Shown here: in pieces, positions 1 through 34,499 of the stretch
How the letters are laid out: every line of letters begins with the position of its first letter
How positions within the stretch are numbered: the stretch's first letter is position 1
NCBI RefSeq assembly: GCF_006345805.1
Contig: NC_043002.1
Coordinates: 10,044,001 to 10,108,000 of the forward strand
Direction: 5' to 3'
Length of the DNA stretch: 64,000 nucleotides
Source: Octopus sinensis
Lineage: Eukaryota
Program-made: the position numbers and the translations under genes
The notes under the pieces: generated by a model
Seen by the model: the letters and a program-made list of their open reading frames with translations, nothing else
The model's database searches: none
What the model was told of the DNA's origin: nothing

Positions 1-143
1 CATGGCAACATCTGACACATAAATACAAACAGAAGCAATATGTTGATGTCAATATATGGTACAAACTCTAAATACTCCATTATATTTCGTTGACCATTAA
101 TTTAATATTGTCAAAATAATGTAACAGTATCTGTTGCTTCCAT

Positions 144-211
144 TCAGCATCGATTGAAATCCGGATAGTAAAACTTGAGGATATTCGAGATAATATGGGC
201 TGGGAAACAAA
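144..211 (-). CDS. Gene 1 probable terminal coding exon: (V)CFPAHIISNILKFYYPDFNRC*
   Basis: Acceptor cttttctacgtttatatattttacag; phase-1 start; adds 2 Cys (12 in total after exon 1) and ends in TGA. Confidence 0.7.
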
Positions 212-301
212 CTGTAAAATATATAAACGTAGAAAAGCGTTTTTCCTTTATGTTTGTGAAGGAAAGAGAGGATTCAATGTGTAATAATAATAATAATAAT
301 A

Positions 302-346
<45 letters not shown>

Positions 347-399
347 TAATAATAATAATAATAATAATAATAAAACTGATTGGAAGTGTTATCATGTAC

Positions 400-932
400 A
401 TTGCTTTGTCTTCGTATAAAAGATGGGCTACAGTAAATATTCTGCTTAATACCACAAATTTGCTTGTCAGCTGTTTGACCTTAACCAGTTGAGCATGTCC
501 CTTAGTGGCTAACGATATGTGCATCACTGATCACGAGCAGAAGTAGTGGGGGAGCATCATAGCCATGTGTTGAGAGGGATTCTTTAGGGTTTGGATAATA
601 TACCTCTGGAAACATAGCTGTTTTGTTCAACATCCTTAAACAACCCTTATTCAGGGACCTTTTGAGCGGGATCGGTTACTCGACCAGAAGAAAATTCTAA
701 CTGGGCCCCACCTGCAAGGTCCTGTGCTGTTTATCTTGATATGAGATCACCATGTCACGCACATACGGTTGTGATGCATGTGCCTGGTGTACCCTTATCA
801 GACGGGTAGTCATGATGGGTATACTGGGCTTCGTATATTTTACCCCAGTGTCATTTTGATGGCATGCACTGCTCTCTCACTCAATAATAATAATAATGAT
901 AATAATAATAATAATAATAATAATACTAATAC

Positions 933-980
<48 letters not shown>

Positions 981-1375
981 GCAGTTGAGCAGTTCTTTTG
1001 ATGGATGACGATATGTGCATCTCTGATCACAAGCAGAAGTTGTTGGGGAACAGTATAGCCATGTGCTGAGAAGAATGTTTCAGCGTTTGGATAATACACA
1101 TCAAGAAACATGGTTGTTGCGTTCAACATGCTCAAACAACCCTTATTCAGGGACCTTTTGAGTGGGATGGGATACTCGATCTGGAGAAAATTCTAACTGG
1201 GCCCCACCTGCAAGGCCATGCGCTGTTTATCTTGATATGAGATCACCATGTCACGCACATACGGTTGAGATGCATGTGCTTGGTGTACCCTTATCAGACG
1301 GGTAGTCATGATAGGCTTCGTATATTTTACCTCAGTGTCAATGTGATGGCATGCACTGCTCTCTCACTCAACAAT
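400..1375 (+). repeat. Unclassified interspersed repeat ending in (AAT)n, two copies in tandem
   Basis: Same sequence at 26615-27180 (-) and 35495-35840 (-); always terminates ..CTCTCTCACTC-(AAT)n. Confidence 0.8.
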
Positions 1376-1589
1376 AATAATAATAATGATGATAATAATG
1401 ATGATGATAATAATGATAATGATGATAATGAAAATGATAATAATGATAATGATAATGATGATAATGATAATAATGATAATGATAATAATGATAATGATAA
1501 TGATGATAATGATAATGATAATAATGATACTGATAATGATGATAATAATAATGATGATAATTATAATGATAATAATGATAATAATGATA

Positions 1590-1634
<45 letters not shown>

Positions 1635-1823
1635 GTGATGGTGGTGATGGTGGTGATGATGATGATGGTGATGATGATGATGGTGATGATGATGATGATG
1701 GTGATGATGGTGATGATGGTGATGATGATGATGATGGTGATGATGGTGATGATGATGATGATGGTGATGATGGTGATGATGGTGATGATGATGATGATGG
1801 TGATGATGGTGATGATGATGGTG

Positions 1824-1908
<85 letters not shown>

Positions 1909-1925
1909 AATAGTGATGATAATAA
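1370..1925. repeat. Compound trinucleotide microsatellite (AAT/GAT/GGT); representative of many long (TAA)n, (TA)n, (CA)n, (TATG)n and (CCTA)n tracts
   Basis: Directly visible; these tracts explain most low-complexity ORFs in the track. Confidence 0.95.
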
Positions 1926-1989
1926 CGATTTCATTTATTTGTCACCCAGGTGAAAAATGACGGGGACAATACGAAGACAGACATAAAGT

Positions 1990-2400
1990 TTTGGCGTTTA
2001 CTCATAATGAAATGAAAAAAATAATAAATAAAATGTAATAAGTATACACGGAATACAATGCAAAGAAAGGTAAATATACATAGAAAACAAAAGGTTTTTA
2101 AAAGAGGTGGGGAGGGGAGGATGATAGAGATGCAGCCCTTCTGATACAGGATGACCTGTAGGGATAATCGAGAAACCCCACTGTCCAAGAATTCCCTGAG
2201 CACCAAGAGCAAGTGCCCGCTCCAATTCCTTCTCTCCGACTCACAGGTCTACACTTAGAGCAGTACCACCCACTCTTGCCTATTTTTGCAACTCTTACCC
2301 ACCGTTCAAGAAAATCACTTTCCTCTCCACTCTCAATTTCCTATTCAAGTGAAACTCGAAGAAGTCAATGAGAGCTCTACCAAAGAGGAATGTATCTGTT
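1990..2400 (-). mobile_element. Probable L1/Tx1 3' end and 3'UTR
   Basis: Degenerate ..KLRVERKV.. C-terminus followed by a pyrimidine/T-rich 3' tail; family assignment tentative. Confidence 0.4.
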
Positions 2401-3429
2401 CTCATATATATATTTCTTTACTACCCACAAGGGGCCAAACATAGAGGGGACAAACAAGGACAGACATAGGTATTAAGTCGATTACATCGACCCCAGTACG
2501 CAACTGGTACTTTATTTATCGACCCCGAAAGGATGAAAGGCAAAGTCGACCTTGGCGGAATTTGAACTCAGATCGTAACGACAGACGAAATACCTATTTC
2601 TTTACTACCCACAAGGGGCTAAACACAGAGGGGACAAACAAGGACAGACAAAGGGATTAAGTCGATTACATCGACCCCAGTACGCAACTGGTACTTTATT
2701 TATCGACCCCGAAAGGATGAAAGGCAAAGTCGACCTTGGCGGAATTTGAACTCAGATCGTAACGACAGACGAAATACCGCTAAGCATTTCGCCCGGCGCG
2801 CTAACGTTTCTGCCAGCTCTTCAGCCTCGTCCACCAAACAACCACTTCCGCTACAGCCATCAGACGAAGGAAAACTGCTTTCCCTGCCTGACTGAAGAGG
2901 GACGCAGCGAAATCATCCCTTCTACTCTTCTATATTACGTCTTACCTTCTAAACGTTCTTCATATGCCGTTACCGAAGGTTCAGTATAAAGCTTAGAGGG
3001 AACAGGTTGGTATATGAGAACTCTTTACTCTCTCTCTCTCTTTTACTGGTTTCAGTCATTTGACTGCGGCCATGCTGGAGCACCGCCTTTAATCGAGCAA
3101 CTCGACCCCGGGACTTATTCTTTGTTTGTAAGCCCTGTATTTATTCTATCGGTCTCTTTTGCCGAACCGCTAAGTAACGGGGACATAAAAACACCAGCAT
3201 CGGTTGTCAAGCAATGCTAGGGGGACAAACACAGACGCACAAACACACACACACACATACACATATATACATATATACGACGGGCTTCTTTCAGTTTCCG
3301 TCTACCAAATCCACTCACAAGGCTTTGGTGGGCCCGAGGCTATAGTAGAAGACACTTGCCCAAGGTGCCACGCAGTGGGACTGAACCCGGAACCATGTGG
3401 TTGGTAAACAGCCACTTACCACACAGCCA

Positions 3430-4080
3430 CAGTTTTCTTCAATTTAATTGTAATGCCCAATGACGAATATGCTGTAGATATCGCGTTGATCATGTGTTGC
3501 AGCTCTTCCTTCGAATGTCCTAACAAGTCAAATTCATCTGCATACAAGAACTTAATGATGTGAGAACGAAGAACTTCCATTTTGGCTCAAAACCTTACGA
3601 GGCTGAAAAGTTTTCTCTATATCTCTCTATATATAAACGGCAACATGTCTGTCTGTGTGTGTGTCCTTTATACAAATCCACAATTTTTCCGTTAGAGAGC
3701 TCACACTTTCTAAGGTTATTCAAAACCGTCCAAGGGTGGTCGTGCACATCGTTTGTGACTTTTTGTGAAATTTCTATCCAAAACCCAATCAAAATGCCCG
3801 AAACTTGATACGCCAATTGAAAGCTTGCTAGCTGTATGTGATTGATCGGAGATTTGGACAGTACTCGCGTGTATCTGTGCACGCACGCAGCTGTATATGC
3901 ATGCACTAGCACTACGGCCCGGCGTTGTCGGGTCATAGTGCTAGTCTTACATAAAACCCTTCAGTACAACCTTCAAAGACCATTTGAAATACAGAGAAAG
4001 CAAAGTAAGAGCGGGAAGATCACCCAGTTTCACACCATTTTCTTCAAAAATTGGGTCTGACTTTAACCTCCAGCATTAAC
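3430..4080 (-). mobile_element. RTE-clade RT fragment split by a Helitron
   Basis: NGVKLG..PALTLLSLYF, then GKLFSL..LYADEFDLLGHSKEELQHM..GITIKLKKT on either side of the insertion. Confidence 0.75.
3622..3944 (+). mobile_element. Non-autonomous Helitron
   Basis: 5' TC, subterminal hairpin CCCGGCGTTGTCGGG, 3' CTAG followed by T; no target-site duplication (TSD). Confidence 0.7.
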
Positions 4081-4320
4081 TCTCACCTCCACCCCTTCAT
4101 GAAATTGTCTAAGCATTCTCACGGAATTTTGAGGACAGACTAGCTCATTCAAGATCTCCCAAAGGGCAATATATATACCTATATATATGCAAGCATATCT
4201 TCATACATGTGTGTGTTTGCATGTAAGGGCATCTGGATGTATGTTCATGTGATAGTAAGTTTTATTAAAGGGAGAATGTTTACATGTATATATGACGGGA
4301 AGATGTTAGGTTATACTCAC

Positions 4321-4452
4321 CTAAATTAAATTGCATACTGAGTTTGGCCACACTACCATATACGCTACAGTACAGTGTTACACACATATTGTGATAAACA
4401 CCAAGCCACTGCTGGCCATGAAGCCTGCAGTTTCCTCGATGATCCCTACAAT
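4321..4452 (-). CDS. Gene 1 coding exon 3: (Y)CRDHRGNCRLHGQQWLGVYHNMCVTLYCSVYGSVAKLSMQFNL
   Basis: Acceptor taataatttcag, donor GTGAGT, 132 nt, phase 1-1. 16 of 28 residues identical to the exon at 34341 across the Cys block. Confidence 0.92.
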
Positions 4453-5005
4453 CTGAAATTATTAATGCAAAATGTAAAAGTCATTGATTCATCGACACAT
4501 ATACACAGCAATCACTACGTGTGTTTCTTATTTCTTTATTACCCACAGGGGGCTAAGCATAGAGGGGACAAACAAGGACAGGCAAAGGGATTAAGTCAAT
4601 TATATCGACTCTAGCGCGTAACAGGTACTTAATTTGTCGACCTAGAAAGGATGAAAGGCAAAGTCGACCTCGGCGGAATTTGAATTCAGAACGTAGCGGC
4701 AGACGAAATATCTATTTCTTTACTACCCACAGGGGGCTAAACATAGAGGAGGACAAACAAGAACAGACAAACGGATTAAGTCGATTATATCGACTCCAGT
4801 ACGTAACTGGTACTTATTTAATTGACCCCGAAAGGATGAAAGGCAAAGTCGACCTCGGCGGAATTTGAATTCAGAACGTAACGGTAGACGAAATACGACT
4901 ACGCATCTCGCCCGGCGTGCTAACGTTTCTGCCAGCCCGACGCCTTAAATCACAGTCTGTGTTTCTGAGCTTCTGTCACTCTCACTGCGACTATTCCCCT
5001 TATAG

Positions 5006-5049
<44 letters not shown>

Positions 5050-5625
5050 GTACTTAATTATCGTCGCCGAAAGGCTGAAAGGCAAAGTGGACCACGGCAG
5101 AATTTGAAATCAGAACGTAGCGGCAGACGAAATACGGCTAAGCATTTCGCCCGGAGTGCTAACGATTCTGCCCGCTCGCCTAACAAAGGACTACCATTCA
5201 CATACTACCTACAACATCCTCCCATTTTTTTTCTACCTTCCACTTCTACTAGCCTACTAACCTCCTTATTAACCCCCAATCTTTGATATTTATTTTCTGC
5301 TCTCATTATTCTCTATCCGAACACCTCCGCAATTCCCACCTTTAATACACGTAGTTCTACTCAATAATCCATCCATCTTTGAACTTCTTTCTTTGAAAAC
5401 CTCAAATGTCGGACCTTTTCCCTGATGACGGAAGCTCGTCTCATGCGACATCGAAATTAATCTACAAATATTAATCTGGATCACCGAGCCCCACAAACGG
5501 CTGTTGGATATTTTTCTTCAACCACTTTAATTCTTGATATCATTTTTATTCTGCATACGTCACACCATTTTATATGTAAACACTCATTTTTTCGTATGTC
5601 AATATAAACAGATATACAAACACAA

Positions 5626-5691
<66 letters not shown>

Positions 5692-5908
5692 AAACGCACG
5701 CACACACACACATACACTGACACACATACCCAGACACACACACCTATTGTATTATAAAATAAATGCAGGAAAATATAATATATAATCGCTCTTATTAAAT
5801 GTCTAAATACTTTAGTGTTTTAGACACTTCCCTACGAAGAGCACTTGCTAAAAAAATTTCAGTATATTGTATTCTCATTGAATATATTTGATTAACGATA
5901 TATATATA

Positions 5909-5990
<82 letters not shown>

Positions 5991-6011
5991 ATAATATATA
6001 TATATATATAT

Positions 6012-6417
6012 AGCGCAGGAGTGGCTATGTGGTAAGTAGCTTGTTTACCAACCACATGGTTCCGGGTTCAGTCCCACTGCGTGGCACCTTGGGCAAGTGT
6101 CTTCTACTATAGCCTCGGGCCGACCAAAGCCTTGTGAGTGGATTTAGTAGACGGAAACTGAAAGAAGCCCGTCGTATATGTGTATATATATATGCGTGTT
6201 TGTGTGTCTGTGTTTGTACCCCTAGCATTGCTTGACAACCGATGCTGGTGTGTTTATGTCCCCGTTACTTAGCGGTTCGGCCAAAGAGACCGATAGAATA
6301 AGTACTGGGCTTACAAAAGAATAAGTCCCGGGGTCGAGTTGCTCGATTAAAGGCGGTGCTCCAGCATGGCCGCAGTCAAATGACTGAAACAAGTAAAAGA
6401 GTAAAAGAGTAAAAGAA
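6012..6417 (+). mobile_element. tRNA-derived SINE family A (representative copy)
   Basis: A/B boxes TGGCT(G/A)TGTGG and GGTTCAGTCC, internal (TA/TG)n, LINE-like tail with (GTAAAAGA)n. Other copies near 3020-3431, 6553-6730, 7478-7872, 9375-10535, 10699-11125, 11357-11760, 30697-31078, 37222-38072, 53618-53996 and 62095-62942. Confidence 0.85.
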
Positions 6418-6456
6418 TATAAATAAATAAATATAATATATATATATAATAAATAA

Positions 6457-6521
<65 letters not shown>

Positions 6522-6728
6522 TGTGTGTGTGTGTCTGTGTGTGTGTATATATAGGCGCAGGAGTGGCTGTGTGGTAAGTAGCTTCCTTGTTCAGATATAT
6601 ATCCTTACCAACAACATGGTTCTGGGTTCAGAACTGCGTGGCGCCTTGGACAAGTTTCTTCTAGTATAACCTCGGGCCGACCAAGGCCTTATGAGTGGAT
6701 TTGGTATACGGAAACTGAAAGGGCGTCG

Positions 6729-6760
<32 letters not shown>

Positions 6761-6765
<5 letters not shown>

Positions 6766-6973
6766 CAAGAAAAAAGTAACAAAAATGGATCAATATTTCG
6801 GTACAATTGTTTCGTACGAAGACCACCTTTATTAAGGCTACAAAAATTGCAGCAAATACACGTGACCCGTACATGTATTTGCTGCAATATTTGCAGCCTT
6901 AATAAAAGTTGTCTTCGTTCGGAACAATTGTACCGATATATTGATCCATTTTAATTGCTTTTTTCTTGCTTAT
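6761..6973. mobile_element. Foldback MITE (~100-bp imperfect arms)
   Basis: aagcaagaaaaaag..ttgcagcaaatac / gtatttgctgcaa..ctttttcttgctt. Confidence 0.7.
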
Positions 6974-7083
6974 AATCACCCCACATTATCTTATGGTTAA
7001 TACCATATAGATTTCTGGTGCATCTAAGTTAAGTACCTCATTCATGTGAATTCAACAGAACTCACTTGAATCTTAATTGCTTT

Positions 7084-7182
<99 letters not shown>

Positions 7183-9032
7183 GCATACGTATAAGCATCT
7201 GTGCACACGAATAGTCACGTGGTTGTTCAGATATATATCTATACACCTAACCACATACAAGCATTTACATCACTTTAATATGCACATACACACACACGTA
7301 TATAATACATGCATTCCTATACACTTACACATATATAGACAAATACATACATAAGTATACACTCATACACACACACACACACACACATATATACATACAG
7401 AGTGCGATGAATATATTTTCATCTAAATTAAGCCAAGATGAAAATAACACTGACATCAATTTAACTTATATATTCTTTTACTCTTTTACTTGTTTCAGAT
7501 ATTTGACTGCGGCCATGCTGGAGCACCGCCTTTAGTCGAGCAAATCGACCCCGGGACTTATTCTTTGTAAGCCCAGTACTTATTCTATCGGTCTCTTTTG
7601 CCGAACCGCTAAGTGACGGGGACGTAAACACACCAGCATCGGTTGTCAAGCAATGCTAGAGAGACAAACACAGACAAACATATACACACACATACATATA
7701 TATATACGGCAGGCTTCTTTCAGTTTCCGTCTACCAAATCCACTCACAAGGCTTTGGTCGGCCCGAGGCTATAGTAGAAGACATTTGCCCAAGATGCCAC
7801 GCAGTGGGACTGAACCCGGCAACCATGTGGTTGGTTAGCAAGCTACTTACCACACAGCCACTCCTGCGCCTATATATAATTACAGAAATTACATAAAAAT
7901 ATTTTGAAATACCAAAAAGTAAATTTTTTCAATGAAATCGCCATTTAGCTTCAACCACGACCTCCAGATGACTTCGAAATGTCCCGCGCGTCTACTGGAC
8001 GGTCTCTTTGTTTAAGTTGGTGAATGCTGCCATAATCTTTGGCTTCAGTTCATCATTGGTGCTACAAGGACTTCTGTTGGTCCCTCGCTCAGCAGCGCCC
8101 CACGCATAATAATGAATGGATTGCTATTTTAAAAGGCGGCAAGCTGGCAGAAACGTTAGCACGCCTGGCGAAATGTTTAGCCGTATTTCGTCTGCCGCTA
8201 CGTTCTGAGTTCAAAATCCGCCGAGGTCGACTTTGCCTTTCATTTCGGGGTCGATAAATTAAGTACCAGTTACGCACTAGGGTCGACGTAATCGACTTAA
8301 TCCGTTTGTCTGTCCTTTTTTCTCCCCTCTGTGTTTAGCCCATTTGGGGTAGTAAAGAAATATATTTTGGGGAGTTTCTTAGCCAGACGTTAGGGGCAAT
8401 GCGGTCACAGCCATTGTGTTGGATGGTACAGAGTTCGGTTACCAAACACAGGATCTTCCATTTCCCAACTTCTTGGCCTAGGGTAGCACTACCTCCGCCA
8501 GGCACTTGATGTAGGCTTCTGTGCTAATTGTGAGGCTATTGGGGGAACATGAATGGGGGCATAACGTCACCATCACGAGTGATCAATCCAAACACCATGA
8601 TGTTGACTGATTTGATTTTGATTTTGATTTTTCCAGTTTCAGCTCATGAGCTGTGGCCATGCTGGGGCACCGCCATTTCGATTTTTCGATTGTTCGATTT
8701 TTATTTATCTCGTTACATGTCTTCAGAATTCACTGTCCTCTGTATATGCATATCTGTCTGTTTGTGTGTGTGTGTGTGTGTCTGTGTACATGTGTGTATG
8801 TGTGTGTGTGTGTGTATTTTGTGTGCGCCTATTTGGTCGCTGTGAATGTGCGTGTGTGATGTGAATGGTCGTTGCTTCTGTAGGTTTATGTGTGCCAGTG
8901 TTTGAGTTTGGGAATCTCTCTTTCCTCATTGAAGAGACTAAAGCTTATATTTACGAAAGTATTACATTTGAGTGTAATATTGCAACTTAACTGCTCGACC
9001 TTTAAGGGCTCAGTTTTATAGTGTTTACTTAC

Positions 9033-9155
9033 ATATTTTCTCAATTTTTGTCTGGTTATTTCTGCATTCTATCAGTTTGCAATCATATTTCGATCTAAGG
9101 ATGGCAGTTTGATCTTCACATATGCAATGTTTGTCGACGTAACAACCCGAACAGC
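9033..9155 (-). CDS. Gene 1 coding exon 2: (S)CSGCYVDKHCICEDQTAILRSKYDCKLIECRNNQTKIEKI
   Basis: Acceptor cttttgttttgtcttcag, donor GTAAGT, 123 nt, phase 1-1, open frame. Same length and Cys spacing as 30358-30480. Confidence 0.92.
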
Positions 9156-9553
9156 CTGAAGACAAAACAAAAGTATGATTTACGGTTTAGAAGCAAGTCA
9201 TTCACATTTTTCGTGAGAAAATAATGCAGTCATCATATCCAATAGATGTTATCTTAACCAAGAGCTTTGTTACAAGCTGGCAGAATCATTAGCATGCCAG
9301 ATAAACTGCTTAGTAGCATTTCTTGACTGAATGTCCTGAGTTCAATTGCAGCCAATGTTGACTTTGCTTTTCCAGGCGCAGGAGTGGCTGTGTGGTAAGT
9401 AGCTTGTTTACCAATCACATGGTTCCGGGTTCAGTCCCACTGCGTGACACCTTGGGCAAGTGTCTTCTACTATAGCCTCGGGCCGACCAAAGCCTTGTGA
9501 GAGGATTTGGTAGACGGAAACTGAAAGAAGCCCGTCGTATATATATATATATA

Positions 9554-10227
9554 CAGGGTCAGGCAAAATGATCTGACACATTTGTAGGTTAAATAAAAGG
9601 CAAATGAAGTAAAGAAACAAAAAAGCGTTTTTATTTTTGAAAAGTAGATATAATGCCATTTTGTTTCATTATGTTTTAAAAATTAAATCAGTCAAATGGG
9701 ATCCATTATTGTCCACACACTGTCGAAGGCGTTCACGAAAGTTGTCAATAACTCGGCGGGTCATTTCATGTGGAATGGCAGTAATTTCTTGACGAATTGC
9801 ATCTTCTCGACGTGCGATGGGGATTTTGAGGAATATGTTCCCTGGTCATTTGATCTCATTGCGTGGTGACATCGGTTGGCCCGCCCGTTCACCTGATTTA
9901 AATCTGTGCGATTTTTTTCTCTGGGGATACCTCAAGTCAAAGGTATACATTAATCGCCCTCGATCTATTGAACAACTTAAAGATGCAATTCGTCAAGAAA
10001 TTACTGCCATTCCACATGAAATGACCCGCCGAGTTATTGACAACTTTCGTGAACGCATTCGACAGTGTGTGGACAATAATGGATCCCATTTGACTGATTT
10101 AATTTTTAAAACATAATGAAACAAAATGGCATTATATGTACTTTTCAAAATAAAAACACTTTTTTGTTTCTTTACTTCATTTGCCTTTTATTTAACCTAC
10201 AAATGTGTCAGATCATTTTGCCTGACC

Positions 10228-10230
<3 letters not shown>
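9554..10230 (+). mobile_element. Tc1/mariner (maT-like) deletion derivative with ~250-bp inverted ends
   Basis: WPARSPDLNLCDFFLWGYLKSKVY transposase C-terminus; 9554-9805 is the reverse complement of 9980-10230; TA flanks; inserted in the internal (TA)n of a SINE. Confidence 0.88.
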
Positions 10231-10313
<83 letters not shown>

Positions 10314-12746
10314 TGTGTTTGTTTGTGTGTCAGTGTTTCTCCCCCTAGCATTGCTTGACAACCGATGCTGGTGTGTTTATGTCCCCGTTACTTAGCGGTT
10401 CGGCAAAAGTGACCGATAGAATAAGTACTGGGCTTACAAAAGAATAAGTCCCGGGGTCGAGTTGCTCGATTAAAGGCGGTGCTCCAGCATGGCCGCAGTC
10501 AAAATGACTGAAACAAGTAAAAGAGAGAGTAAAGAGTCGAATATTAAATTAGATTGCTGGATGTTGATAAATAGTCAGAACACGAATAAAGAAAGCATAT
10601 TAGTGGCACACATTGAGAAATAGGAAAATACTGATTTGTATGCCGTTTAGATTTTTCACAAGCAGTAGTAGAAGAAAAAGTAGTGAATAACGGAATATAG
10701 GCGTAGAAGTGGCTGTGTGGTAAGTAGCTTGCTAACCAACCACATGGTTCAGGGTTCAGTCCCACTGCGTGGCACCTTGGGCAAGTGTCTTCTACTATAG
10801 CCTCGGGCCAACCAAAGCCTTGTGAGTGGATTTTGTAGACGGAAACTGAAAGAAGCCTGTCGTATATATGTATATATATATATATGTATATGTGTGTATA
10901 TGTTTATGTGTGTCTGTATTTGTCCCCCCTAGCATTGCTTAACAACCGATGCTGGCGTGTTTACGTCCCCGTCACTTAGCTGTTCATCAAAAGAGACCGA
11001 TAGAATAAGTACTGGGGTTACAAAGAATAAGTCCCGGGGTCGATTTGCTCGACTAAAGGCGGTGCTCCAGCATGGCCGCAGTCAAATGACTGAAACAAGT
11101 AAAAGAGTAAAAGAGTAAAAGAGTAAGGTAGAATGAGAGAATTTGGAGATTCAAATCTCTAACAATCTCTATACTATTAAATCACAAGGCAAAACTAAAC
11201 TGCTTCGTCATTGCAGATCAGTGGTTTAGTAGATGTTTATCGAATATGTTCGTATAATATTTTCAAAAACAATAACAGGAAGTACAAAATACGAAAATGA
11301 ATTAGCGTTCGCGTTTGCACTTAAGAAGGCTTTATGTCTGTAAAAGATGAGTTACTCGTTTACTCTTTTACTCTTTTACTTGTTTCAGTCATTTGACTGT
11401 GGCCATGCAGGAGCACCGCCTTTAGTCGAGTAAATCGACCCCAGGACTTATTCTTTGTAAGCCTAGTACTTATTATATTGGTCTCTTTTGCCGAACCGCT
11501 AGGTTACAGGGACGTAAACACACCAGCATCGGTTGTCAAGCGATGTGGGGGGGGACAAACACAGACACACAAACACACACACAAATATATATATATACAT
11601 ATATACGACGGGCTTCTTTCAGTTTCCGTCTACCAAATGCACTCACAAGGCTTTAGTCGGCCCGAGGCTATAGTAGAAGACACTTGCCCAAAGTGCCACG
11701 CAGTGGGACTGAACCCGGAACCATGTGGTTGGTAAGCCAGCTACTTACCACACAGCCACTCGCGCCACAGTTTCGTATAAATAAATATATTTTTCTACTT
11801 TGGGCAAAAGGCTCAAAATTTCTGGAGCGGGGGGCCAGTCGATTAGATCGACTGCAGTGCGTAACTGGTACTTAATTTATCGACCAGCGAAAGGATGAGA
11901 GGCAAAGTCGACCTCGGCGGAATTTGAACTCAGAACATGAAGGCAGACGGAATACCTATTTCTTTACTACCCACAAGGGGATAAACACAGAGAGGACAAA
12001 CAAGGACAGACACACGGATTAAGTCGATTATATCGACCCCAGTGCGTAACTGGTACTTATTTACTCGACCCCGAAAGGATGAAAGGCAAAGTCGACCTCG
12101 GCGAAATTTGAACTCAGAACGTAGCGACAGACGAAATACCGCTAAGCATTTCGCCCGGCGTGCTAACGTTTCTGCCAGCTCGCCGCTTTAGACAGACGAA
12201 ATACCTATTTCTTTACTACCCACAAGGGGCTAAACACAGAGAGGACAACCAAGGACAGAACACGGATTAAGTCGATTATATCGACCCTAGTGCGTAACTG
12301 GTACTTATTTAATCGACCCCGAAAGGATGAAAGGCAAAGTCGACCTCGGCAGAATTTGAACTCAGAACGTAGTGGTAGACGAAATGCCACGAAGCGTTTC
12401 ACCCGGTGTGCTTATTTACTTACTCCCCGACCTCGGCGGAATTTCAAATCAGAACATAGCGGCAGACGAAACACCGCTAAGAATTTCGCCGGGCGTGCTA
12501 ACGTTTCTGCCAGCTCACCGCCTCGTGTAAATAAATATATTTACGGATGTTAATTTATTAGTTCACAGAGAAACGCAGCGTTCTAGAAGATCAGTGTTAA
12601 AACTTGATATATAGTTTTTGTAATATCGGTATTTAAACTTTATTTACAGACGTTGTAGGTGTGAAGATGATCGACAATAAAATTCGTACTGATTAGATTA
12701 TTTATTTTAGCGAATTACAAAATTTTGCAAATGGTTTTAGAAACTA

Positions 12747-13129
12747 CTAGCAGTATCGCCCGGCGTTGCTCAGGTTTGTAAGGGAAATAACTATAAAGCA
12801 TTTTTAGAGAGTTCTAGCCAAAAAATAGCAAAAAATAGAAAAAATGATGTTAAATTTTTTTTTGAGATTTAAAAAAGGTGGAGTTGCGTCCCCTAGACAG
12901 TTTATGGTTTGTGTTCTGATTCTCGACCCCATGTCGAATTTATCGATTTTTTTCAGAACTGGGGGATCTTTTCAAAATTTTCGCTGCGTTAGTTTTGAAT
13001 TATGACATTGGGCTATGTTTGTGTCAAGTTTCATCAGAATCGGTTGAAAGCCGTGGTCAGGGTGAGGGTACAAGCAACAGACACACAGAAGAAACACGCA
13101 CAGACAAACTGCCGTTTATTAGAGAGAGA
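12747..13129 (-). mobile_element. Non-autonomous Helitron
   Basis: 3' hairpin + CTAG end shared with 33639-34034. Confidence 0.7.
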
Positions 13130-13185
13130 TTCACAATAATATCTGACCGTTTGAAATGTTGAAGGCGACTGGAGGAAGAATTATG

Positions 13186-13622
13186 GGATCTTTTCGGTTT
13201 GAATGGCAGTTTTTTGAAATAATTTCCACGTAACTAAACACTTTTAAACTTCGTATACTGGTAGAATGTCTTTATAAAACATCTTTTTCTCTTGGCTTTA
13301 TTGAGAAAATTCTATAGTTTGTAAGATATTTGTTGTTTTTTTTCTTCAATTTCTGCAATTTCAACCAATCAATGACGTCTATTGAGGTGAAAACATTCTG
13401 CGCCGTATGAATATGTCCCTCGTTTAAGAAACAGATTGGGTTTATTTACATTTCTGAAGAAAAAGATATCCCTAACCCTAACCCTAACCCTAACTAACCC
13501 TAACTCTAACCCTAACCCTAAAACAGATTGAAGTGCAATAGATCGATACTAGGGTCATAATTATGGGTGACAATTTCATATGACACCGCTAGAAAAAATT
13601 GCCGGTCAAACCGAAAAGATCC
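13186..13622. mobile_element. MITE with ~30-bp TIRs, 8-bp TSD and internal (CCCTAA)n
   Basis: GGATCTTTTCGGTTTGA..TCAAACCGAAAAGATCC flanked by GAATTATG on both sides. A GG terminus with an 8-bp TSD suggests Merlin (inference). Confidence 0.85.
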
Positions 13623-13719
13623 GAATTATGTAGGTACTTGAAGTGATCTAAACGAAGTTCATAGTGTGACAAGTACAAATATATATCTTTTTAAATGTAA
13701 TAAAAAAATGAAATCTTAC

Positions 13720-13807
13720 TCGCGGCTACAATGCTATCCACAATACCGTTATAACAATTGACAAGGAGAGGAAGAAAGAGAAGCAAAGCGAGTGCATACG
13801 TGTGCAT
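13720..13807 (-). CDS. Gene 1 coding exon 1: signal peptide MHTYALALLLFLPLLVNCYNGIVDSIVAA
   Basis: Acceptor ttttattttaattacag directly before ATG; 88 nt (29 codons + 1); donor GTAAGA; hydrophobic core ALALLLFLPLLV; phase 1 joins in frame to the exon at 9155. Confidence 0.85.
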
Positions 13808-14149
13808 CTGTAATTAAAATAAAACAATAGAAAATATTAGCTTCAAATTTTGGTGCAAACTCATGAATTTCTACAGAGAGGGCAAGTCAACCTCTGTGGA
13901 ATTTGGAATTAAAATGTGAAGAAGAACGCAATGCCGTCAAACAATTTTCGCACGATTCTACCAGCGCTTCGACCTGCGCAAAAGTAAATATTCCTCTGGT
14001 AAAGTTCAAGTCATTCTGATGACGCTGGTTAGGTAAACGCAAGTTTACCTCAAAAATAACGAACTGACACAGCTGTAAATGTTATCTTAGCCATAATTAA
14101 AATATGATCATTCAACACTAATGATCAAATTCCAATTGTTATGCATTGC

Positions 14150-14400: not shown

Positions 14401-14757
14401 AGAATCTGTTGATTCTTTTCATTGGCTTTTGAATTACAATATAACTCTATTAACAGTAGCAAGAGGAATTTGAAGATTTTCGACAACTTTTCGCTGGCTA
14501 AGACCCGCCTCAGATTGCCCAACAATACAACCTCTTTGAAAATCTGACAGTTCTGCTGAATTTTTTTGTGCGTGGCATGGTTACTTTTCATAAATGTTTA
14601 ACATAATGGTACCTGGAATGAGAAAAAAAATTATTACATTGTAAATTCTACACCCCTGAAAACATATTAAGACGCTTAGATCAGAAATTTTGAAAATTAA
14701 AGGTGGCTATTTACTTCCTGCATGTCTGTGTGTATATTAGATAAATATATATGTATG

Positions 14758-14844
<87 letters not shown>

Positions 14845-14848
<4 letters not shown>

Positions 14849-15627
14849 TGCGTGACCTGGGTATTCACATGAGTGATGACGCGACCTTTCATGTACATGT
14901 TGCTAAACTGGCAATGAAATGTAGACGGCTGGCCGGATGGATTCTTAGAACCTTTAGAACAAGAGAACAAGAAACCATGATGGTCCTCTGGAAGACACTT
15001 GTCCTAAGCCACTTTGACTATTGCTCTCAGCTATGGTCACCATCCAGTGTCAAGTTGATCATAGAGCTTGAGGCGATCCAACGAAGCTACACGAAGAAGA
15101 TAGCCTCTGTGCAGCATATAAGCTACTGGGAAAGACTCAAGAGATTAAAACTCTATTCCTTGGAGCGTAGGCGAGAAAGATATGCCATAATATACATCTG
15201 GAAGATCCTGGAAGGACTTGTCCCAAACTTTGGTATCGAGAGTCACACAAATGCCAGAACTGGGCGCCACTGCGTGGTACCAAGGACTCCAAATTTGCCA
15301 TCAAGATGTAAGACAAGATACTGTGATAGCCTGGGCTTCAGAGGCCCACAGCTCTTCAATATCCTCCCGAAGAACCTGAGGGATCTGCATGGTGTAGATG
15401 CGGATGTCTTTAAAGTAGGACTGGACCTCTTCCTGTCAGGTGTCCCAGATGAACCAACTTCACGGCAGGAGGTGCAGATGAGGGCAACTGCATTGAACTC
15501 TCTCATGCACCAAATGGCAGTTGCTAAAAAGCATTCGTGAGGTAAAATCATGTAGCAAACCAAATGGCGGTGCCCCAGCATGGTCACAGCTCATGAGCTG
15601 AAACCGGAAAAATCAAAATCAATCAAA

Positions 15628-23149: not shown

Positions 23150-24020
23150 TATATATAATTTCTATATATATAAATTGCTTAAATTAGTTATCCGGCGGTG
23201 TTTAAGAGTGTTCTTGTAGAAATTTCTGGGGTTTTTCATATTTGGCTATTCACAGTACAATGTATATATTAAAGATGATCGTTTGTGTGTGTTTAGCAAT
23301 TTAAAATTTTTTTTCCATAAGATTGTAGATATTAAAGTTTTTAAAGATGATCATTTGTGTGTTCGTCCACAGAAAACTGAATATAATCAAGTTTTTAAGC
23401 CTGTAAATTGTTTAAGTAAAGATAGCCAGAGGCGTTTAAGAGTGTTCCTGCAGAGGAATTTTTTTACTTATTTGGCTATTCACAGTACAGTGTAGATATT
23501 AAAGTTCTTAAAGATGATCGTTTGTGTGTTCACGGAAAGTTTTACTTTTCACATAATATTGTAGATAGTAATGTTTTTAGAGATAATCGTTTGTGTGTCC
23601 GTCCAGAGAATACTGTAGATAGTCAAGTTTTTAAAGTTATTTAGAATGAGATTTTAAATACTCACAGAGGATTATAGATACTACAGTTTTCAAAATAATG
23701 TTTTTTGGTTGTAATAGAATGTCTGTATATATATATATATATATATCTAATTTCTATATATATAAATTGCTTAAGTTGAATAACCGGAGGCGTCTAAGAG
23801 TGTTCTTGCAGAGAAAACAGGGATGTTTACATATTTGGCTAGTCACAGAGAAAAGAAGGGTTTTGGGTATTCATAGGAAATTGTAAATATTAGAGTTTTT
23901 AAAGATGATTGTTTGTGTGTTCGTCCGGATAAAATTGTAGATAATCGAGTTTTTAAAGCTAATTAGAATGAGATTTTAGGTACTCACTGAAAATTTTAGA
24001 TATTCCAGTTTTTAAAAGTT
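23150..24020. repeat. Degenerate higher-order tandem repeat
   Basis: AAAGATGATCGTTTGTGTGT recurs about 5 times; TTTAAGAGTGTTC..ATTTGGCTA recurs 3 times; ~595-bp super-period. Confidence 0.65.
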
Positions 24021-24108
24021 GTTTTTCAGTTGTTGTAGAATTCCTGTGTCTTCAGCTGCTGAATTATCAGAGCAGCGAAAGACACGTCTAGCTGCTACCA
24101 GGGCAGGC

Positions 24109-24872
<764 letters not shown>

Positions 24873-24914: not shown

Positions 24915-24966
24915 ATGTTTATATATTCGATACTTTTAATTACAGCTCTGTGCGTTTCTGGTGATA
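24915..24966 (+). CDS. Gene 2 coding exon 1: signal peptide MFIYSILLITALCVSGD
   Basis: Acceptor tttctattcttctttcag directly before ATG (same arrangement as gene 1); 52 nt; donor GTAAGT; phase 1. Confidence 0.88.
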
Positions 24967-26099
24967 GTAAGTTTTCACATTGTTCGCCTTTTTTATTCAT
25001 TTATTCTGCTGAACAGGTTTATGGTAAATAACTCTAATCTAATTCCTTTTCCCCCTATTGCTGTTGCATGAACCTATGCGAAAAAGCTATATCAGGCCAA
25101 CTGCGAAATAATATCAATAACATCTTACATGCCAGGAACCAGTTTTCCTCCTTTCTATATTTGTAAAGTCTATAAAATATTTTCCAACATCAGAGACCCC
25201 ATTTCTAAGTCACTCCAGTTCATATCATTGCCGTTTAGAATTATTTGAATATCTTACTGAGTGACAATACAAATCCTAAATATATTTTTTTCGGCTCTTT
25301 AAGTTCAGACATCAAATACCGCTAAGGTTGGCATCGCTGGTCATCCTTTCAGGATCGATAACAGAAGTACCAGTTGAGTATTGGGGTCGATGAAATCGAC
25401 TATAGTCTTTCAACAAAATTTTGTGCCTCATGTGTAAGGCAGAAAGCGTTATCATTATTATTATCACTGAGGCGGGCAGAAACATTAGCACGCCGGGCGA
25501 AATGTGTAGCCGTATTTTGTCTGCTGTTACGTTCTGAGTTCAAATTCCGCCGAGGTCGAATTTGCCTTTCATCCTTTCGGGGTCGATAAATTAAGTACCA
25601 GTTATGCACTGGTGTCGATGTAATCGACTTAATCTGTTTGTTTGTCCTTGTTTGTCCCCTCTGTGTTTAGCCCCTTGTGGGTAGCAAAGAAAGTATTTCG
25701 CCCGTTGCTCTGTACTGAGTTCAAATTCCGCTGTGGTCAACTTTATCTTACATCCTTTCGGACTCGAAAAAATAAATACCAGTTAAACATTGCGTCGATG
25801 TAATCGACTCATCTTCTTTTGCCTTCCCCATTTCGTCCATTACCATTTCTGGTGTATGATGGTACCAAGCACACGTGACCTCATATCCATAGTAGCCAGT
25901 GGAGGTTTTGGGCTACCTTGTCGTGTTTTGGCTTGTACTATTGCATTTGTCCGTTGCATTTGTGTGGTATATATCCTTTTACACTGAGTTGGTATTCACT
26001 GCCTGGTCCTGAGCAGCGATGATTAGGCTTTTCTGTATTCTTTTTTAGGTCACCCTTGTTAAAGAAAAAGAATCTTCTTTAATATTATTATTATTATTC

Positions 26100-26603
26100 A
26101 GTAGTTTTACTTTTTAAACGTGCTTTCCCTTCGTTACCGAGCGCAGCTCTATGTGCCTTGGGTATGTGCTGTGGTTTGGTTTGATGGTCTTATGGTTACT
26201 GTATTGAAAGTGTTTTGCGTGGGATGTGTGCAGTGCCCAGTAGTGCAATTTTCTGTATGTTATATGTGTTTGTAAGTCCTTGTGTTTTTGTTATGTATTT
26301 GTCTGAATATTTTTTTATCATACCTAATGCACCTACTATGATAGGAACTGTTTCTGTTTTTAGATTCCACATTCTAGTTACCCCTATTTCCAGGTCTTTG
26401 TATTTTGAAAGTTTCTCCATTTCTTTTAGAGACACGTTGTCATCTGCTGGTATTGATACATCAATTAGAAAGCATTTTTTTCTTCATGATCTCTAACAAC
26501 TATATCTGGTCTGTTGACCTTAATTTCTCTATCTGTGTGTATTGGCATATCCCAGAGTATGGTTGCTTTCTCGTTTTCTGTGAACTTTTCTGTGACCTTT
26601 ATT
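26100..26603 (-). mobile_element. R4/Dong-type 3' end (restriction-like endonuclease)
   Basis: EKLSKYKDL..VPIIVGALG..QKIALLGTAHI; flanked by TAA tracts. Confidence 0.85.
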
Positions 26604-27181
26604 ATTATTATTATTGAGTGAGAGAGCAGTGCATGCCATCAGAGTGACACTGGGCTAAAATATACGAAGCCCAGTATACCCATCATGACTAGCCGTCTGA
26701 TAAGGGTACACTAGGCACATGCATCACAATCATATGTGCGCGACATGGCGATCTCATATCAAGATAAACAGCACATGACCTTGCAAGGTGGGGCCCAGTT
26801 AGAATTTCCTTCTGGTCGAGTAACCCATCCTACTCAAAAGGTCTCTCAATAAGGGTTGTTTAAGGATGTTGAACGAACCACCCATGTTTCCAGAGGTGAA
26901 TTATTCAAACCCCAAAGAATCCCTCTCAACACATGTTTATGATGCCCCCCCCGCACCACCACTACTTCAGCTCGTGATCAGAGATGCTCATATCGTCAGA
27001 CACCAAGGGACATGCTCAACTGATTAAGGTCAAGCAAATGACAACCAAATCTGTGGTATTGAGCAGAATATTTGCTGTAGCCCATCTTTTATACCAAGAC
27101 AAAACAATGTACATGATAACACTCCCAATCAGTTAAGATCAGAAGCCATGAGAGCCACTGCCTGATACTACATCAGGGCAT

Positions 27182-27257
<76 letters not shown>

Positions 27258-27485
27258 TTTTTTTTTTCTTCTTTCAAATTTGCTTCCATTTCTTGCCGAG
27301 TGTCTTCCCGACTCCTAGGGCAAAGAAACTCATAGTATACAATGGTAGGCCATTAAACCAAACTCAGTAGTTCGTTCATTTTTTTATTTTTTTATGTTAA
27401 ATTAAAATACATGAGCAGCAACAGTTCTCACATCGACAATGCTCTTCTCAATACGTGTGATGTACCAGTATTATTATTATTATTA

Positions 27486-27593
<108 letters not shown>

Positions 27594-27870
27594 GTAGTAG
27601 TAGTAGTAGTATAATTATTGTTAATATCATGATTATTATCATCATCAATTTTGTTATTATTCTTTTCTACTCTAGGCACAAGGCCCGAAATTTTGGGGGA
27701 GGGGGCCAGTCTATTAGATCGGCCGCAGTACGCAACTGGTACTTAATTTATCGTCCCCGAAAGGATGAAATCCAAAGTTGACCCAAACGGAATTTGAATT
27801 CAGAACGTAAAGACAGATGAAATACCGCTAAACATTTCGCCCGGTGTGCTAACGTTTCTGCCAGCTCGCC

Positions 27871-27935
<65 letters not shown>

Positions 27936-27939
27936 GTTG

Positions 27940-27986
<47 letters not shown>

Positions 27987-28013
27987 GTTGTTATTATTAT
28001 TATTATTATTATT

Positions 28014-28045
<32 letters not shown>

Positions 28046-28056
28046 AATCATCATTA

Positions 28057-28087
<31 letters not shown>

Positions 28088-28140
28088 TTTTATTATCATT
28101 ATTATTATCATTATTTTTATTATCATTATTATTATCATTA

Positions 28141-28188
<48 letters not shown>

Positions 28189-28398: not shown

Positions 28399-28461
<63 letters not shown>

Positions 28462-32764: not shown

Positions 32765-32795
<31 letters not shown>

Positions 32796-34472: not shown

Positions 34473-34499
34473 GTATGTATAATCTGCTATTTTGGGGGT

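What the first reader, a model, noticed from the sequence alone, without database searches (positions are those of the whole stretch)
144..13807. Complete 136-aa model for gene 1 with 12 cysteines after the leader exon
Deduced protein: MHTYALALLLFLPLLVNCYNGIVDSIVAASCSGCYVDKHCICEDQTAILRSKYDCKLIECRNNQTKIEKIYCRDHRGNCRLHGQQWLGVYHNMCVTLYCSVYGSVAKLSMQFNLVCFPAHIISNILKFYYPDFNRC. The even Cys count is compatible with six disulfides. There is one N-glycosylation sequon (NQT). The acceptor before ATG implies an unseen 5' UTR exon in the intergenic region.
Basis: partly seen in the sequence, partly recalled or inferred. Interest (0 to 1): 0.7.

Follow-up and report, generated by a model that had tools for sequence, protein, structure and literature searches.

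The report
Octopus-only secreted 12-cysteine protein gene
The four-exon gene model holds up: it encodes a small secreted protein with a fixed 12-cysteine frame, from a fast-evolving, uncharacterised gene family found so far only in octopuses.

Summary
The 136-aa model is correct as written. It lies on the minus strand in four coding exons (13807-13720, 9155-9033, 4452-4321, 211-144). All introns are phase 1 with canonical splice sites, and a poly(A) signal follows the stop codon.

It is the syntenic ortholog of Octopus bimaculoides LOC128248170 (143 aa, 62% identity). Exon boundaries, C-terminus and all 12 post-leader cysteines match.

An exhaustive HMMER search found relatives only in three Octopus species, about ten paralogs, all named 'uncharacterized'. 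No Pfam or PDB sequence match exists. The window holds a second paralog head-to-head and part of a third.

Outside the cysteine frame the coding sequence changes about as fast as introns, evenly across codon positions. An intact frame with all 12 Cys kept is very unlikely under neutrality (5e-5).

An AlphaFold model of the ortholog (core pLDDT about 90) is all-beta. It most resembles pairs of fibronectin type I modules, but profile comparison gives no sequence support.

All seven family genes examined have an acceptor abutting the ATG, and two RefSeq paralog models splice an upstream exon exactly there.

Function is inferred: an extracellular binding protein under diversifying selection. Interest is moderate.

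The parts
13808..13825 (-). Pyrimidine tract plus CAG acceptor directly abutting the start codon. It implies a 5' UTR intron and an upstream non-coding exon, which was not located.
   Evidence: Sequence GTTTTATTTTAATTACAG|ATG. Conserved in O. bimaculoides, in window gene 2 and in four other paralog loci. Upstream exons are spliced exactly here in two RefSeq paralog models.
13720..13807 (-). Coding exon 1 (88 nt): start codon, signal peptide (hydrophobic core residues 4-16, probable cleavage after VNC18) and the linker YNGIVDSIVAA.
   Evidence: Hydropathy profile. Donor GA|gtaaga. Aligns to exon 1 of P0001, with a 7-aa indel after the signal peptide.
9033..9155 (-). Coding exon 2 (123 nt): Cys 1-6 (C-x2-C-x5-C-x-C-x12-C-x4-C) and the NQT sequon. 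This is the most diverged exon.
   Evidence: It is 73% nt identical to the ortholog, against 82% for colinear non-coding DNA.
4321..4452 (-). Coding exon 3 (132 nt): Cys 7-10 and the motif C-x-D-x-R-G-N-C...G-x-x-W-x-G-V-Y...C-V-x-x-x-C. This is the best conserved exon.
   Evidence: 79% aa identity to P0001. Lowest dN/dS of the exons, 0.39.
144..211 (-). Coding exon 4 (68 nt including TGA): Cys 11-12 and the tail ...ILKFYYPDFNRC*.
   Evidence: Same acceptor phase and same stop position as P0001. Homologous terminal exons occur in gene 2 and gene 3.
101..106 (-). Poly(A) signal ATTAAA, 40 nt after the stop codon.
   Evidence: O. bimaculoides has AATAAA at the same offset in an 89%-identical 3' flank.
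212..4320 (-). Intron 3 (4.1 kb, phase 1). It carries microsatellites and interspersed repeats of about 400 bp.
   Evidence: Colinear blocks 79-88% identical to the O. bimaculoides intron.
4453..9032 (-). Intron 2 (4.6 kb, phase 1), with repeat copies.
9156..13719 (-). Intron 1 (4.6 kb, phase 1), with repeat copies.

Best explanation
Gene 1 is a real, intact protein-coding gene of an octopod. It is the ortholog of Octopus bimaculoides LOC128248170 and belongs to an unnamed, tandemly duplicated family found so far only in Octopus.

Shown:
- The four phase-1 coding exons encode a signal peptide and a mature protein of about 118 aa (about 13.6 kDa, pI about 8.5).
- The frame of 12 cysteines is invariant across the family.
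- The rest of the sequence changes about as fast as non-coding DNA.

Inferred:
- The protein is secreted and held by six disulfides.
- It folds into an elongated all-beta structure of two small 'finger' modules, each a short hairpin plus a three-stranded sheet, followed by a short helix and a C-terminal tail pinned by the last cysteine.
- In shape it resembles a pair of fibronectin type I modules.
- The rigid disulfide scaffold presents variable surface loops, so it most likely acts outside the cell as a binding protein or ligand rather than an enzyme.
- Repeated duplication and faster-than-flank exon change suggest that its partners change too: prey or pathogen molecules, or conspecific receptors in reproduction or chemical signalling.
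- Transcription starts at an unlocated non-coding exon upstream, spliced exactly onto the ATG.
For: Gene model.

Orthology: 62% identity over the full length (E 1e-53). Introns and flanks are colinear at 77-91% identity. Exon phases are identical.

Family:
- Exhaustive phmmer over 1.84 billion representatives gave 10 hits at E<=0.001. Nine are Octopus proteins and one is a repeat protein from a metagenome that I take to be spurious.
- A profile search added two more Octopus members.
- The 12 Cys are invariant.
- Paralogs lie in the window.
- O. bimaculoides has two clusters on one chromosome.

Constraint: neutral simulation gives P = 5e-5 for keeping the frame and all 12 Cys.

Fast change:
- dN/dS is 0.72 overall.
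- Differences fall 28/26/28 over codon positions, and the coding sequence is 20% diverged against 17.7% for colinear non-coding DNA.
- Exon 2 is 26.8% diverged (p=0.012).
- The gene 2/gene 3 terminal exons differ at 8 of 68 nt (by my reading of the two sequences, seven of the eight changes alter the amino acid), against 12 of 466 in the flanks (p=0.0017).

Fold:
- The AlphaFold2 model of the ortholog with a 13-row alignment has mean pLDDT 77 and about 90-95 over residues 40-125, with eight strands and one helix.
- The top seven Foldseek PDB hits are fibronectin FnI module pairs (E 1.5e-3 to 8e-2, target-normalised TM 0.40-0.51 for the pair-length chains and 0.20-0.35 for the longer ones, about 90 columns).

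5' exon. Poly(A) signal.
Against: - No transcript, proteomic or functional data were available. The ortholog is itself a computational RefSeq model.
- Even substitution over codon positions is also what a non-coding or dying sequence would show. Only the intact frame, the Cys conservation and the paralog comparisons argue otherwise.
- The fold rests on a shallow alignment (six full-length sequences plus exon fragments) and was predicted for the ortholog, not the window protein. The single-sequence model failed (pLDDT 35).
- The FnI resemblance is modest and has no sequence support: hhalign probability 0.6% and no Pfam hit. The Cys frame is 6+6 rather than 4+4.
- Measured against synonymous sites, dN/dS is below 1, so positive selection is not proven for gene 1 itself.
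- The tissue of expression and the binding partner are unknown.
Confidence: 0.6

Rival explanations
1. The locus is a decaying or unexpressed copy in this species. The open frame survives by chance, and the apparent gene is only a relic of the O. bimaculoides gene.
For: Substitutions are spread evenly over codon positions (28/26/28), and coding divergence is no lower than intron divergence. The exact protein is absent from a 15-billion-protein collection that holds annotated O. sinensis and O. vulgaris proteomes. I saw no transcript evidence.
Against: Frame, start, stop, all six splice sites and the poly(A) signal are intact. All 12 Cys are retained. The neutral simulation gives 5e-5 for that outcome. 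Exons 2-4 have no indels, while the flanks have many. The same pattern of fixed Cys and a variable remainder holds across the expressed-looking paralogs.
Confidence: 0.07
2. The main product uses a different 3' end: read-through of the exon 3 donor or another terminal exon. The secreted protein would then lack Cys 11-12 and have only 10 cysteines.
For: RefSeq lists isoforms with alternative C-termini for two paralogs. LOC128248178 has X1/X2/X3, and LOC128248169 has X1-X4, some of which lack the last two Cys.
Against: The ortholog LOC128248170 has a single protein product across four accessions, and it uses the same terminal exon. That exon, its acceptor, its two Cys, its stop codon and the poly(A) signal are all conserved. 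An odd number of partners would leave unpaired Cys.
Confidence: 0.1
3. It is a divergent member of a known small disulfide-rich superfamily: Ly6/uPAR three-finger (as one UniRef name for a paralog suggests), an IL-17-like cystine knot, or beta-microseminoprotein.
For: UniRef names paralog LOC106872966 a 'UPAR/Ly6 domain-containing protein'. IL-17 chains appear far down the Foldseek list (ranks 21, 30, 50). From my own knowledge, IL-17-like genes are expanded in octopus and a beta-MSP-like pheromone exists in squid.
Against: None of the 12 members matches any of these Pfam families even at E<=10. A family profile finds nothing in PDB sequences at E<=10. No three-finger or MSMB structure is in the top 50 Foldseek hits, and the IL-17 hits have probability 0.05-0.06. 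The sequence lacks the adjacent CC and the terminal C-N of Ly6 domains and the C-x-G-x-C of cystine knots.
Confidence: 0.08
4. It is a true, very divergent homolog of the fibronectin type I / VWC-subdomain fold family, not just a look-alike.
For: All of the top seven Foldseek hits are FnI pairs, and five of them have probability 1.00. The model has a hairpin plus a three-stranded sheet, twice over. Exon 3 carries a C-x-D-x-x-G...G-x-x-W...C motif reminiscent of FnI/VWC. That is my reading of the sequence, a lead only.
Against: hhalign of the family against seven human FnI modules gives probability 0.6%. There is no fn1 or VWC Pfam hit. The Cys frame is different. The two halves show no detectable repeat. 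By my knowledge, FnI modules are confined to chordates.
Confidence: 0.15

Closest known systems
Octopus bimaculoides LOC128248170 (XP_052825004-007, 'uncharacterized protein') and its paralogs LOC128248081, 128248169, 128248178, 106872050, 106872966, 106869804, 106869796 and 106869794; O. sinensis LOC118763715 and 118763828; O. vulgaris CAI9723911
   Same: Signal peptide, 12-Cys frame, four phase-1 coding exons, acceptor abutting the ATG, C-terminal Cys as the last residue, and a syntenic locus for LOC128248170.
   Different: Only 62% identical to its ortholog. It has a 7-aa deletion after the signal peptide, an extra Cys in the leader, and its glycosylation sequon at another site. The window species is not O. 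bimaculoides (orthologous non-coding DNA is about 82% identical), and this exact protein is absent from the 15-billion-protein collection searched.
Fibronectin type I module pairs (e.g. 8-9FnI in PDB 3gxe/3ejh, 2-3FnI in 2cku/3cal)
   Same: The predicted shape is two small consecutive disulfide-braced beta modules, each a hairpin plus a three-stranded sheet, about 90 residues in all. By analogy these are extracellular binding modules.
   Different: No sequence-profile similarity. Six Cys per half instead of four. C-x4-C in the central strand instead of C-x-C. An extra helix and a Cys-anchored tail. It is a stand-alone protein of an invertebrate.
Fast-evolving secreted cysteine-frame multigene families (cone-snail toxin superfamilies, animal defensin-like families, squid beta-microseminoprotein pheromone)
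   Same: The mode of evolution is alike: a conserved signal exon and Cys frame, hypervariable residues between the cysteines, tandem duplication, and exons diverging as fast as or faster than flanking non-coding DNA.
   Different: No sequence or fold relation was shown. The mature protein is much larger than most such peptides. No gland-specific or other expression data exist for this family.

Membership tests
Unnamed Octopus 12-Cys secreted protein family (LOC128248170-like) | Significant full-length sequence similarity to family members | tested here: met
   E 1e-53, 62% identity and 100% coverage to P0001. Exons 2-4 hit every paralog in tblastn.
Unnamed Octopus 12-Cys secreted protein family (LOC128248170-like) | Cys frame C-x2-C-x5-C-x-C-x12-C-x4-C-x11-C-x6-C-x14-C-x4-C-x16-C-x19-C, with the last Cys at the C-terminus | tested here: met
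   All 12 columns are invariant or nearly so in the 12-sequence alignment A3. The only gaps are in a truncated model.
Unnamed Octopus 12-Cys secreted protein family (LOC128248170-like) | Four coding exons with phase 1-1-1 (signal exon, 6-Cys exon, 4-Cys exon, 2-Cys exon) and an acceptor directly before the ATG | tested here: met
   Window genes 1 and 2 and five loci from O. bimaculoides, O. vulgaris and O. sinensis.
Unnamed Octopus 12-Cys secreted protein family (LOC128248170-like) | N-terminal signal peptide (secretion) | tested here: inconclusive
   Hydrophobic core at residues 4-16 and small residues at -3/-1 (VNC|Y), from a hydropathy scan only. No dedicated predictor or experiment was available.
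Fibronectin type I domain (Pfam fn1) | Match to the family profile | tested here: not met
   No Pfam hit at E<=10 for any of 12 members. hhalign against seven human FnI modules gave probability 0.6%. The module sequences were taken from my recalled N-terminal sequence (verified against PDB chains) and, for modules 8-9, from the PDB alignment of 3m7p.
Fibronectin type I domain (Pfam fn1) | Four Cys per module of about 45 aa, with C-x-C in the central strand (C1-C3, C2-C4) | tested here: not met
   The sequence has six Cys per half and C-x4-C. Disulfide connectivity is not testable with these tools.
Fibronectin type I domain (Pfam fn1) | Fold: two-stranded hairpin packed on a three-stranded antiparallel sheet | tested here: inconclusive
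   The predicted model has this strand order twice. FnI pairs are the top Foldseek hits, with target-normalised TM about 0.5. This rests on a model of the ortholog built from a shallow alignment.
Ly6/uPAR three-finger domain | Pfam UPAR_LY6 match, C-C-x(4-5)-C-N end motif and three-finger fold | tested here: not met
   No Pfam hit. No adjacent CC or terminal CN. No three-finger structure in the top 50 Foldseek hits. The only support is one UniRef name for a paralog.
IL-17-like / cystine-knot cytokines | Pfam IL17 match or a knot motif (C-x-G-x-C plus C-x-C) and the fold | tested here: not met
   No Pfam hit. No C-x-G-x-C motif. IL-17 Foldseek hits have probability 0.05-0.06.
Beta-microseminoprotein (PSP94) | Pfam PSP94 match and a 10-Cys frame | tested here: not met
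   No Pfam hit, 12 Cys rather than 10, and no MSMB structure among the Foldseek hits.

The most novel reading that the evidence does not exclude
The family is an octopod invention. In this reading it is a stand-alone secreted protein made of two fibronectin-type-I-like finger modules, a fold otherwise tied to chordate matrix and clotting proteins. It would have arisen independently or diverged beyond recognition, then expanded by tandem and inverted duplication under diversifying selection. Its role would be as variable ligands, for example saliva or venom components, mucosal immune binders, or egg/sperm or chemotactile signalling molecules.
Probability: 0.15. Interest if true: 0.6.

Novelty: new member of a known kind. 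Interest (0 to 1): 0.35.

Why it matters
This gene is a clean comparative example of a lineage-restricted secreted protein family in cephalopods, a group whose orphan genes are largely unexplored.

The gene structure is now fixed at base resolution. The family is delimited at about a dozen members in three Octopus genomes, with two more members in this window. There is also a testable structural hypothesis: two FnI-like modules held by six disulfides.

The evolutionary pattern is a frozen cysteine frame with everything else changing at or above the non-coding rate. A recent inverted duplicate has exon changes outrunning its flanks. This is the signature of molecules engaged in arms races or mate recognition.

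Expression mapping could therefore quickly point to a role in saliva or venom, mucosal immunity, reproduction or chemical sensing. If expression turns out to be ordinary and low, this remains one more uncharacterised cysteine-rich family.

Tried and rejected
- **Pfam:** scans of gene 1 and of all 12 aligned members at E<=10 gave only scattered chance hits, and no fn1, VWC, UPAR_LY6, IL17 or PSP94.
- **PDB by sequence:** searches with the protein and with the family profile found nothing relevant.
- I did not work around this. I used the permitted ortholog P0001 and exact window exon translations instead.
- **Single-sequence AlphaFold:** it failed with pLDDT 35.
- **First fragment alignment:** it was misaligned and I discarded it.
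- **Foldseek against viral structures:** nothing found.
- **hhalign:** family against FnI modules gave probability 0.6%. First half against second half showed no repeat.
- **Locating the 5' non-coding exon:** four attempts found no convincing candidate.
  - Alignment of the conserved upstream block; the O. bimaculoides side runs into an assembly gap.
  - tblastn with the N-terminal extensions of paralog models.
  - Fuzzy search for the shared ATGCCAC(C)GATAT 5'-exon motif.
  - blastn with the paralog 5'-exon regions.
- **Species identification:** comparison with O. vulgaris and O. sinensis paralog loci matched only repeats.
- **Literature:** searches for every LOC and UniProt identifier returned nothing. 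General searches found no description of the family.
- **Octo-SAP:** the Octopus vulgaris sperm-attractant peptide, about 11 kDa by my recollection, was considered as a possible identity. Its paper is not held, so this is untested.
- **P0011:** this repeat protein from a metagenome, listed by phmmer, was rejected as spurious.

Full report
**1. Observation**

The window is AT-rich eukaryotic DNA (about 36% G+C), full of microsatellites and retrotransposon fragments.

The exact exon limits are 13807-13720 (88 nt), 9155-9033 (123 nt), 4452-4321 (132 nt) and 211-144 (68 nt including TGA). Each is bounded by cag|...|gt(a/g)ag, and all three introns are phase 1. The joined 411 nt translate to the stated sequence.

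The protein has 13 cysteines, 12 of them after the leader exon, as claimed. The thirteenth (C18) is the likely last residue of the signal peptide and is Ser in the ortholog. The single sequon N63-Q-T is present. The ATG is abutted by GTTTTATTTTAATTACAG. An ATTAAA poly(A) signal lies 40 nt after the stop, at 106-101.

**2. Comparative support for the model**

A search of 5.8 billion protein clusters found one relative: RefSeq 'uncharacterized protein LOC128248170' of Octopus bimaculoides (P0001, 143 aa). It is 62% identical over the whole length and ends in the same 'RC'.

Its locus (L001, chromosome CM046606.1 at about 106.75 Mb) is colinear with window 281-21819. Non-coding blocks are 77-91% identical, so the two genes are orthologs and the window comes from another octopod.

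The ortholog has the same four coding exons, the same phases and the same donor and acceptor sequences. The same acceptor tract sits before its ATG, and an AATAAA lies at the same offset after its stop.

The exact 136-aa protein is not in a 15-billion-protein collection. This copy therefore appears unannotated in the collection searched.

**3. The family**

An exhaustive phmmer run of P0001 against 1.84 billion representatives returned ten further proteins at E<=0.001. Nine are Octopus proteins. The tenth is a metagenomic repeat protein that I reject as spurious.

A profile search added two more members. Between them they come from eight further O. bimaculoides genes, two O. sinensis genes and one O. 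vulgaris gene. All are named 'uncharacterized' or 'hypothetical', apart from one automatic UniRef label, 'UPAR/Ly6 domain-containing'.

In the 12-sequence alignment the 12 cysteines are invariant. The frame is C-x2-C-x5-C-x-C-x12-C-x4-C-x11-C-x6-C-x14-C-x4-C-x16-C-x19-C.

O. bimaculoides has at least two clusters on one chromosome, at 90.57-90.76 Mb and at 106.75 Mb. In the second cluster LOC128248169 follows LOC128248170.

The window holds two more copies:
- Gene 2 lies head-to-head with gene 1 on the plus strand: 24915-24966, 30358-30480, 34341-34472, 39762-39829. It encodes 124 aa and its closest relative is LOC128248081.
- The last exon of a third copy lies at 60383-60318 on the minus strand, inside a 96-97.5% identical inverted duplication.

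No Pfam family and no PDB sequence matches any member. No paper mentions any of the identifiers.

**4. Mode of evolution**

Between gene 1 and its ortholog the Nei-Gojobori estimates are dN 0.218, dS 0.303 and dN/dS 0.72. By exon, dN/dS is 0.39 for exon 3 and 0.64-0.68 for exons 2 and 4.

The 82 differences fall 28/26/28 over the three codon positions. Coding divergence is 20.0%. That is no lower than the 17.7% of colinear non-coding blocks (p=0.28), and it is higher than the 13.4% of the tightly aligned exon flanks (p=0.004). Exon 2 alone is 26.8% diverged (p=0.012).

Yet the frame, the splice sites and all 12 Cys are intact. Random substitution at 20% keeps the frame open in 5.4% of trials, keeps all Cys in 0.09%, and does both in 0.005%.

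The recent gene 2/gene 3 duplicates repeat the pattern. Their terminal exons differ at 8 of 68 nt. By my reading of the two sequences, seven of those changes alter the amino acid. Their flanks differ at 12 of 466 nt (odds ratio 5, p=0.0017).

The scaffold is under strong constraint, and the remainder evolves at or above the non-coding rate. This fits diversifying selection, but for gene 1 alone it does not prove it.

**5. Structure**

I therefore modelled the ortholog.

Alone it gave a useless model (pLDDT 35). With six full-length family members and seven exact window exon translations (alignment A4), the mean pLDDT rose to 77 and to about 90-95 over residues 40-125.

The model has strands at 41-43, 46-48, 53-57, 61-68, 71-80, 92-97, 100-109 and 112-120, a helix at 125-129 and a poorly defined tail.

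Foldseek against the PDB put fibronectin type I module pairs in all of the top seven places (3gxe, 3ejh, 1qgb, 2cku and predicted TG2-fibronectin complexes), with more below. E-values run from 1.5e-3 to 8e-2, five of the seven have probability 1.00, target-normalised TM is 0.40-0.51 for the pair-length chains (0.20-0.35 for the longer ones), and about 90 columns align. The viral library gave nothing.

At the sequence level the link is not supported. I recalled the human FnI modules, verified them as identical to PDB chains and aligned them. They score probability 0.6% against the family profile. The two halves of the protein show no detectable repeat.

I therefore describe the protein as FnI-pair-like in predicted shape, not as an FnI family member.

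**6. The 5' exon**

All seven family genes examined have a pyrimidine tract plus CAG immediately before the signal-peptide ATG. These are window genes 1 and 2 and five loci from three species.

In two RefSeq models (LOC106869794 X1 and LOC128248169) an upstream exon ending ...TAT|gtaagt or ...TAT|gtaggt is spliced exactly onto that ATG. This adds a short artefactual-looking N-terminal extension. LOC128248081 has a similar extension.

LOC128248170 has four accessions for one protein sequence, which I take to mean UTR variants.

The exon itself could not be found in the window by four different searches.

**7. Interpretation**

Shown:
- a complete, conserved, intact gene for a small protein with a signal-like leader and a fixed 12-Cys frame;
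- membership of an Octopus-restricted, duplicating, fast-changing family.

Inferred:
- secretion and six disulfides;
- a two-module beta 'finger' architecture;
- an extracellular binding role with changing partners.

The data do not tell saliva or venom, immunity, reproduction and chemical signalling apart.

The rivals are less likely (see their entries): a pseudogene, a different terminal exon, a three-finger, cystine-knot or beta-MSP relative, and true FnI homology.

**8. Verdict**

The finding is real and the model is right. In kind it is an ordinary lineage-specific cysteine-rich secreted protein gene whose ortholog is already predicted, though uncharacterised, in RefSeq. Its evolutionary pattern and predicted fold make it a reasonable target for expression and structural work. 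Interest is 0.35.

Noticed in passing
window 24915-39829 (+): A second complete family gene (gene 2, 124 aa) lies head-to-head with gene 1, with the two ATGs 11.1 kb apart. Exons are 24915-24966, 30358-30480, 34341-34472 and 39762-39829, all phase 1. It has the same 12-Cys frame and a CAG acceptor abutting its ATG. Its closest relative is O. bimaculoides LOC128248081.
   Followed up: yes
window 36369-44218 (+) vs 63794-56292 (-): An inverted segmental duplication at 96-97.5% identity (three blocks). It carries the last exon of gene 2 and the last exon of a third family copy (60383-60318, minus strand), whose upstream exons would lie beyond the window end. The two terminal exons differ at 8 of 68 nt (seven amino-acid-changing by my reading), against 12 of 466 in the flanks (p=0.0017). 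An assembly artefact (collapsed or palindromic haplotig) is not excluded.
   Followed up: partly
window 42967-44816 (+), 56574-57542 (-), 55287-55739 (-), 14722-15540 (+): Non-LTR retrotransposon fragments. One ORF has an AP-endonuclease domain (Exo_endo_phos_2, E 2e-11) and one has a reverse transcriptase domain (RVT_1, E 9e-17). One C-terminal fragment is inserted in the conserved block upstream of gene 1, and the orthologous stretch of O. bimaculoides has no counterpart of this insertion.
   Followed up: partly
window 48980-50937 (+) and 41281-41841 (+) / 58153-58076 (-): Long ORFs with no Pfam hit. By eye one carries a GIY-YIG-like motif (KSYIGMTSNSFKTRWYAH), which suggests a Penelope-like element. 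This was not tested further.
   Followed up: no
window 3014-3430, 6005-6416, 7471-7875, 10695-11126, 11347-11761, 30689-31080; and 2411-2824, 4529-4947, 11837-12190, 25467-25809: Two families of interspersed repeats, about 400 bp and about 350-400 bp long and 84-92% identical between copies, fill the introns of genes 1 and 2. They largely explain why gene 1 spans 13.7 kb against 6.9 kb in O. bimaculoides.
   Followed up: partly
window 1265-1960, 24019-24501, 27800-28498, 35753-36435, 40093-41146, 50984-53336: Very long microsatellite and low-complexity arrays (ATT/ATC/CAT trinucleotides, TA/TG dinucleotides) that produce spurious long ORFs in several frames.
   Followed up: no
L001 25232-25267; L003 10001-10015: The upstream (5') exons of two O. 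bimaculoides paralogs share the start ATGCCAC(C)GATAT. Each contains an in-frame ATG that gives the RefSeq proteins short N-terminal extensions ahead of the signal peptide. These are probably upstream ORF artefacts rather than real N-termini.
   Followed up: partly
family alignment A3 (P0001, P0003, P0007, P0018, P0009) and P0020 in alignment A4: Many paralogs carry an N-glycosylation sequon directly after the C-x-C motif (C-x-C-[DSN]-N-x-[ST] or C-x-C-N-x-[ST]). Gene 1 has lost it (C-I-C-E-D-Q-T) and has a different, unconserved sequon at N63.
   Followed up: partly
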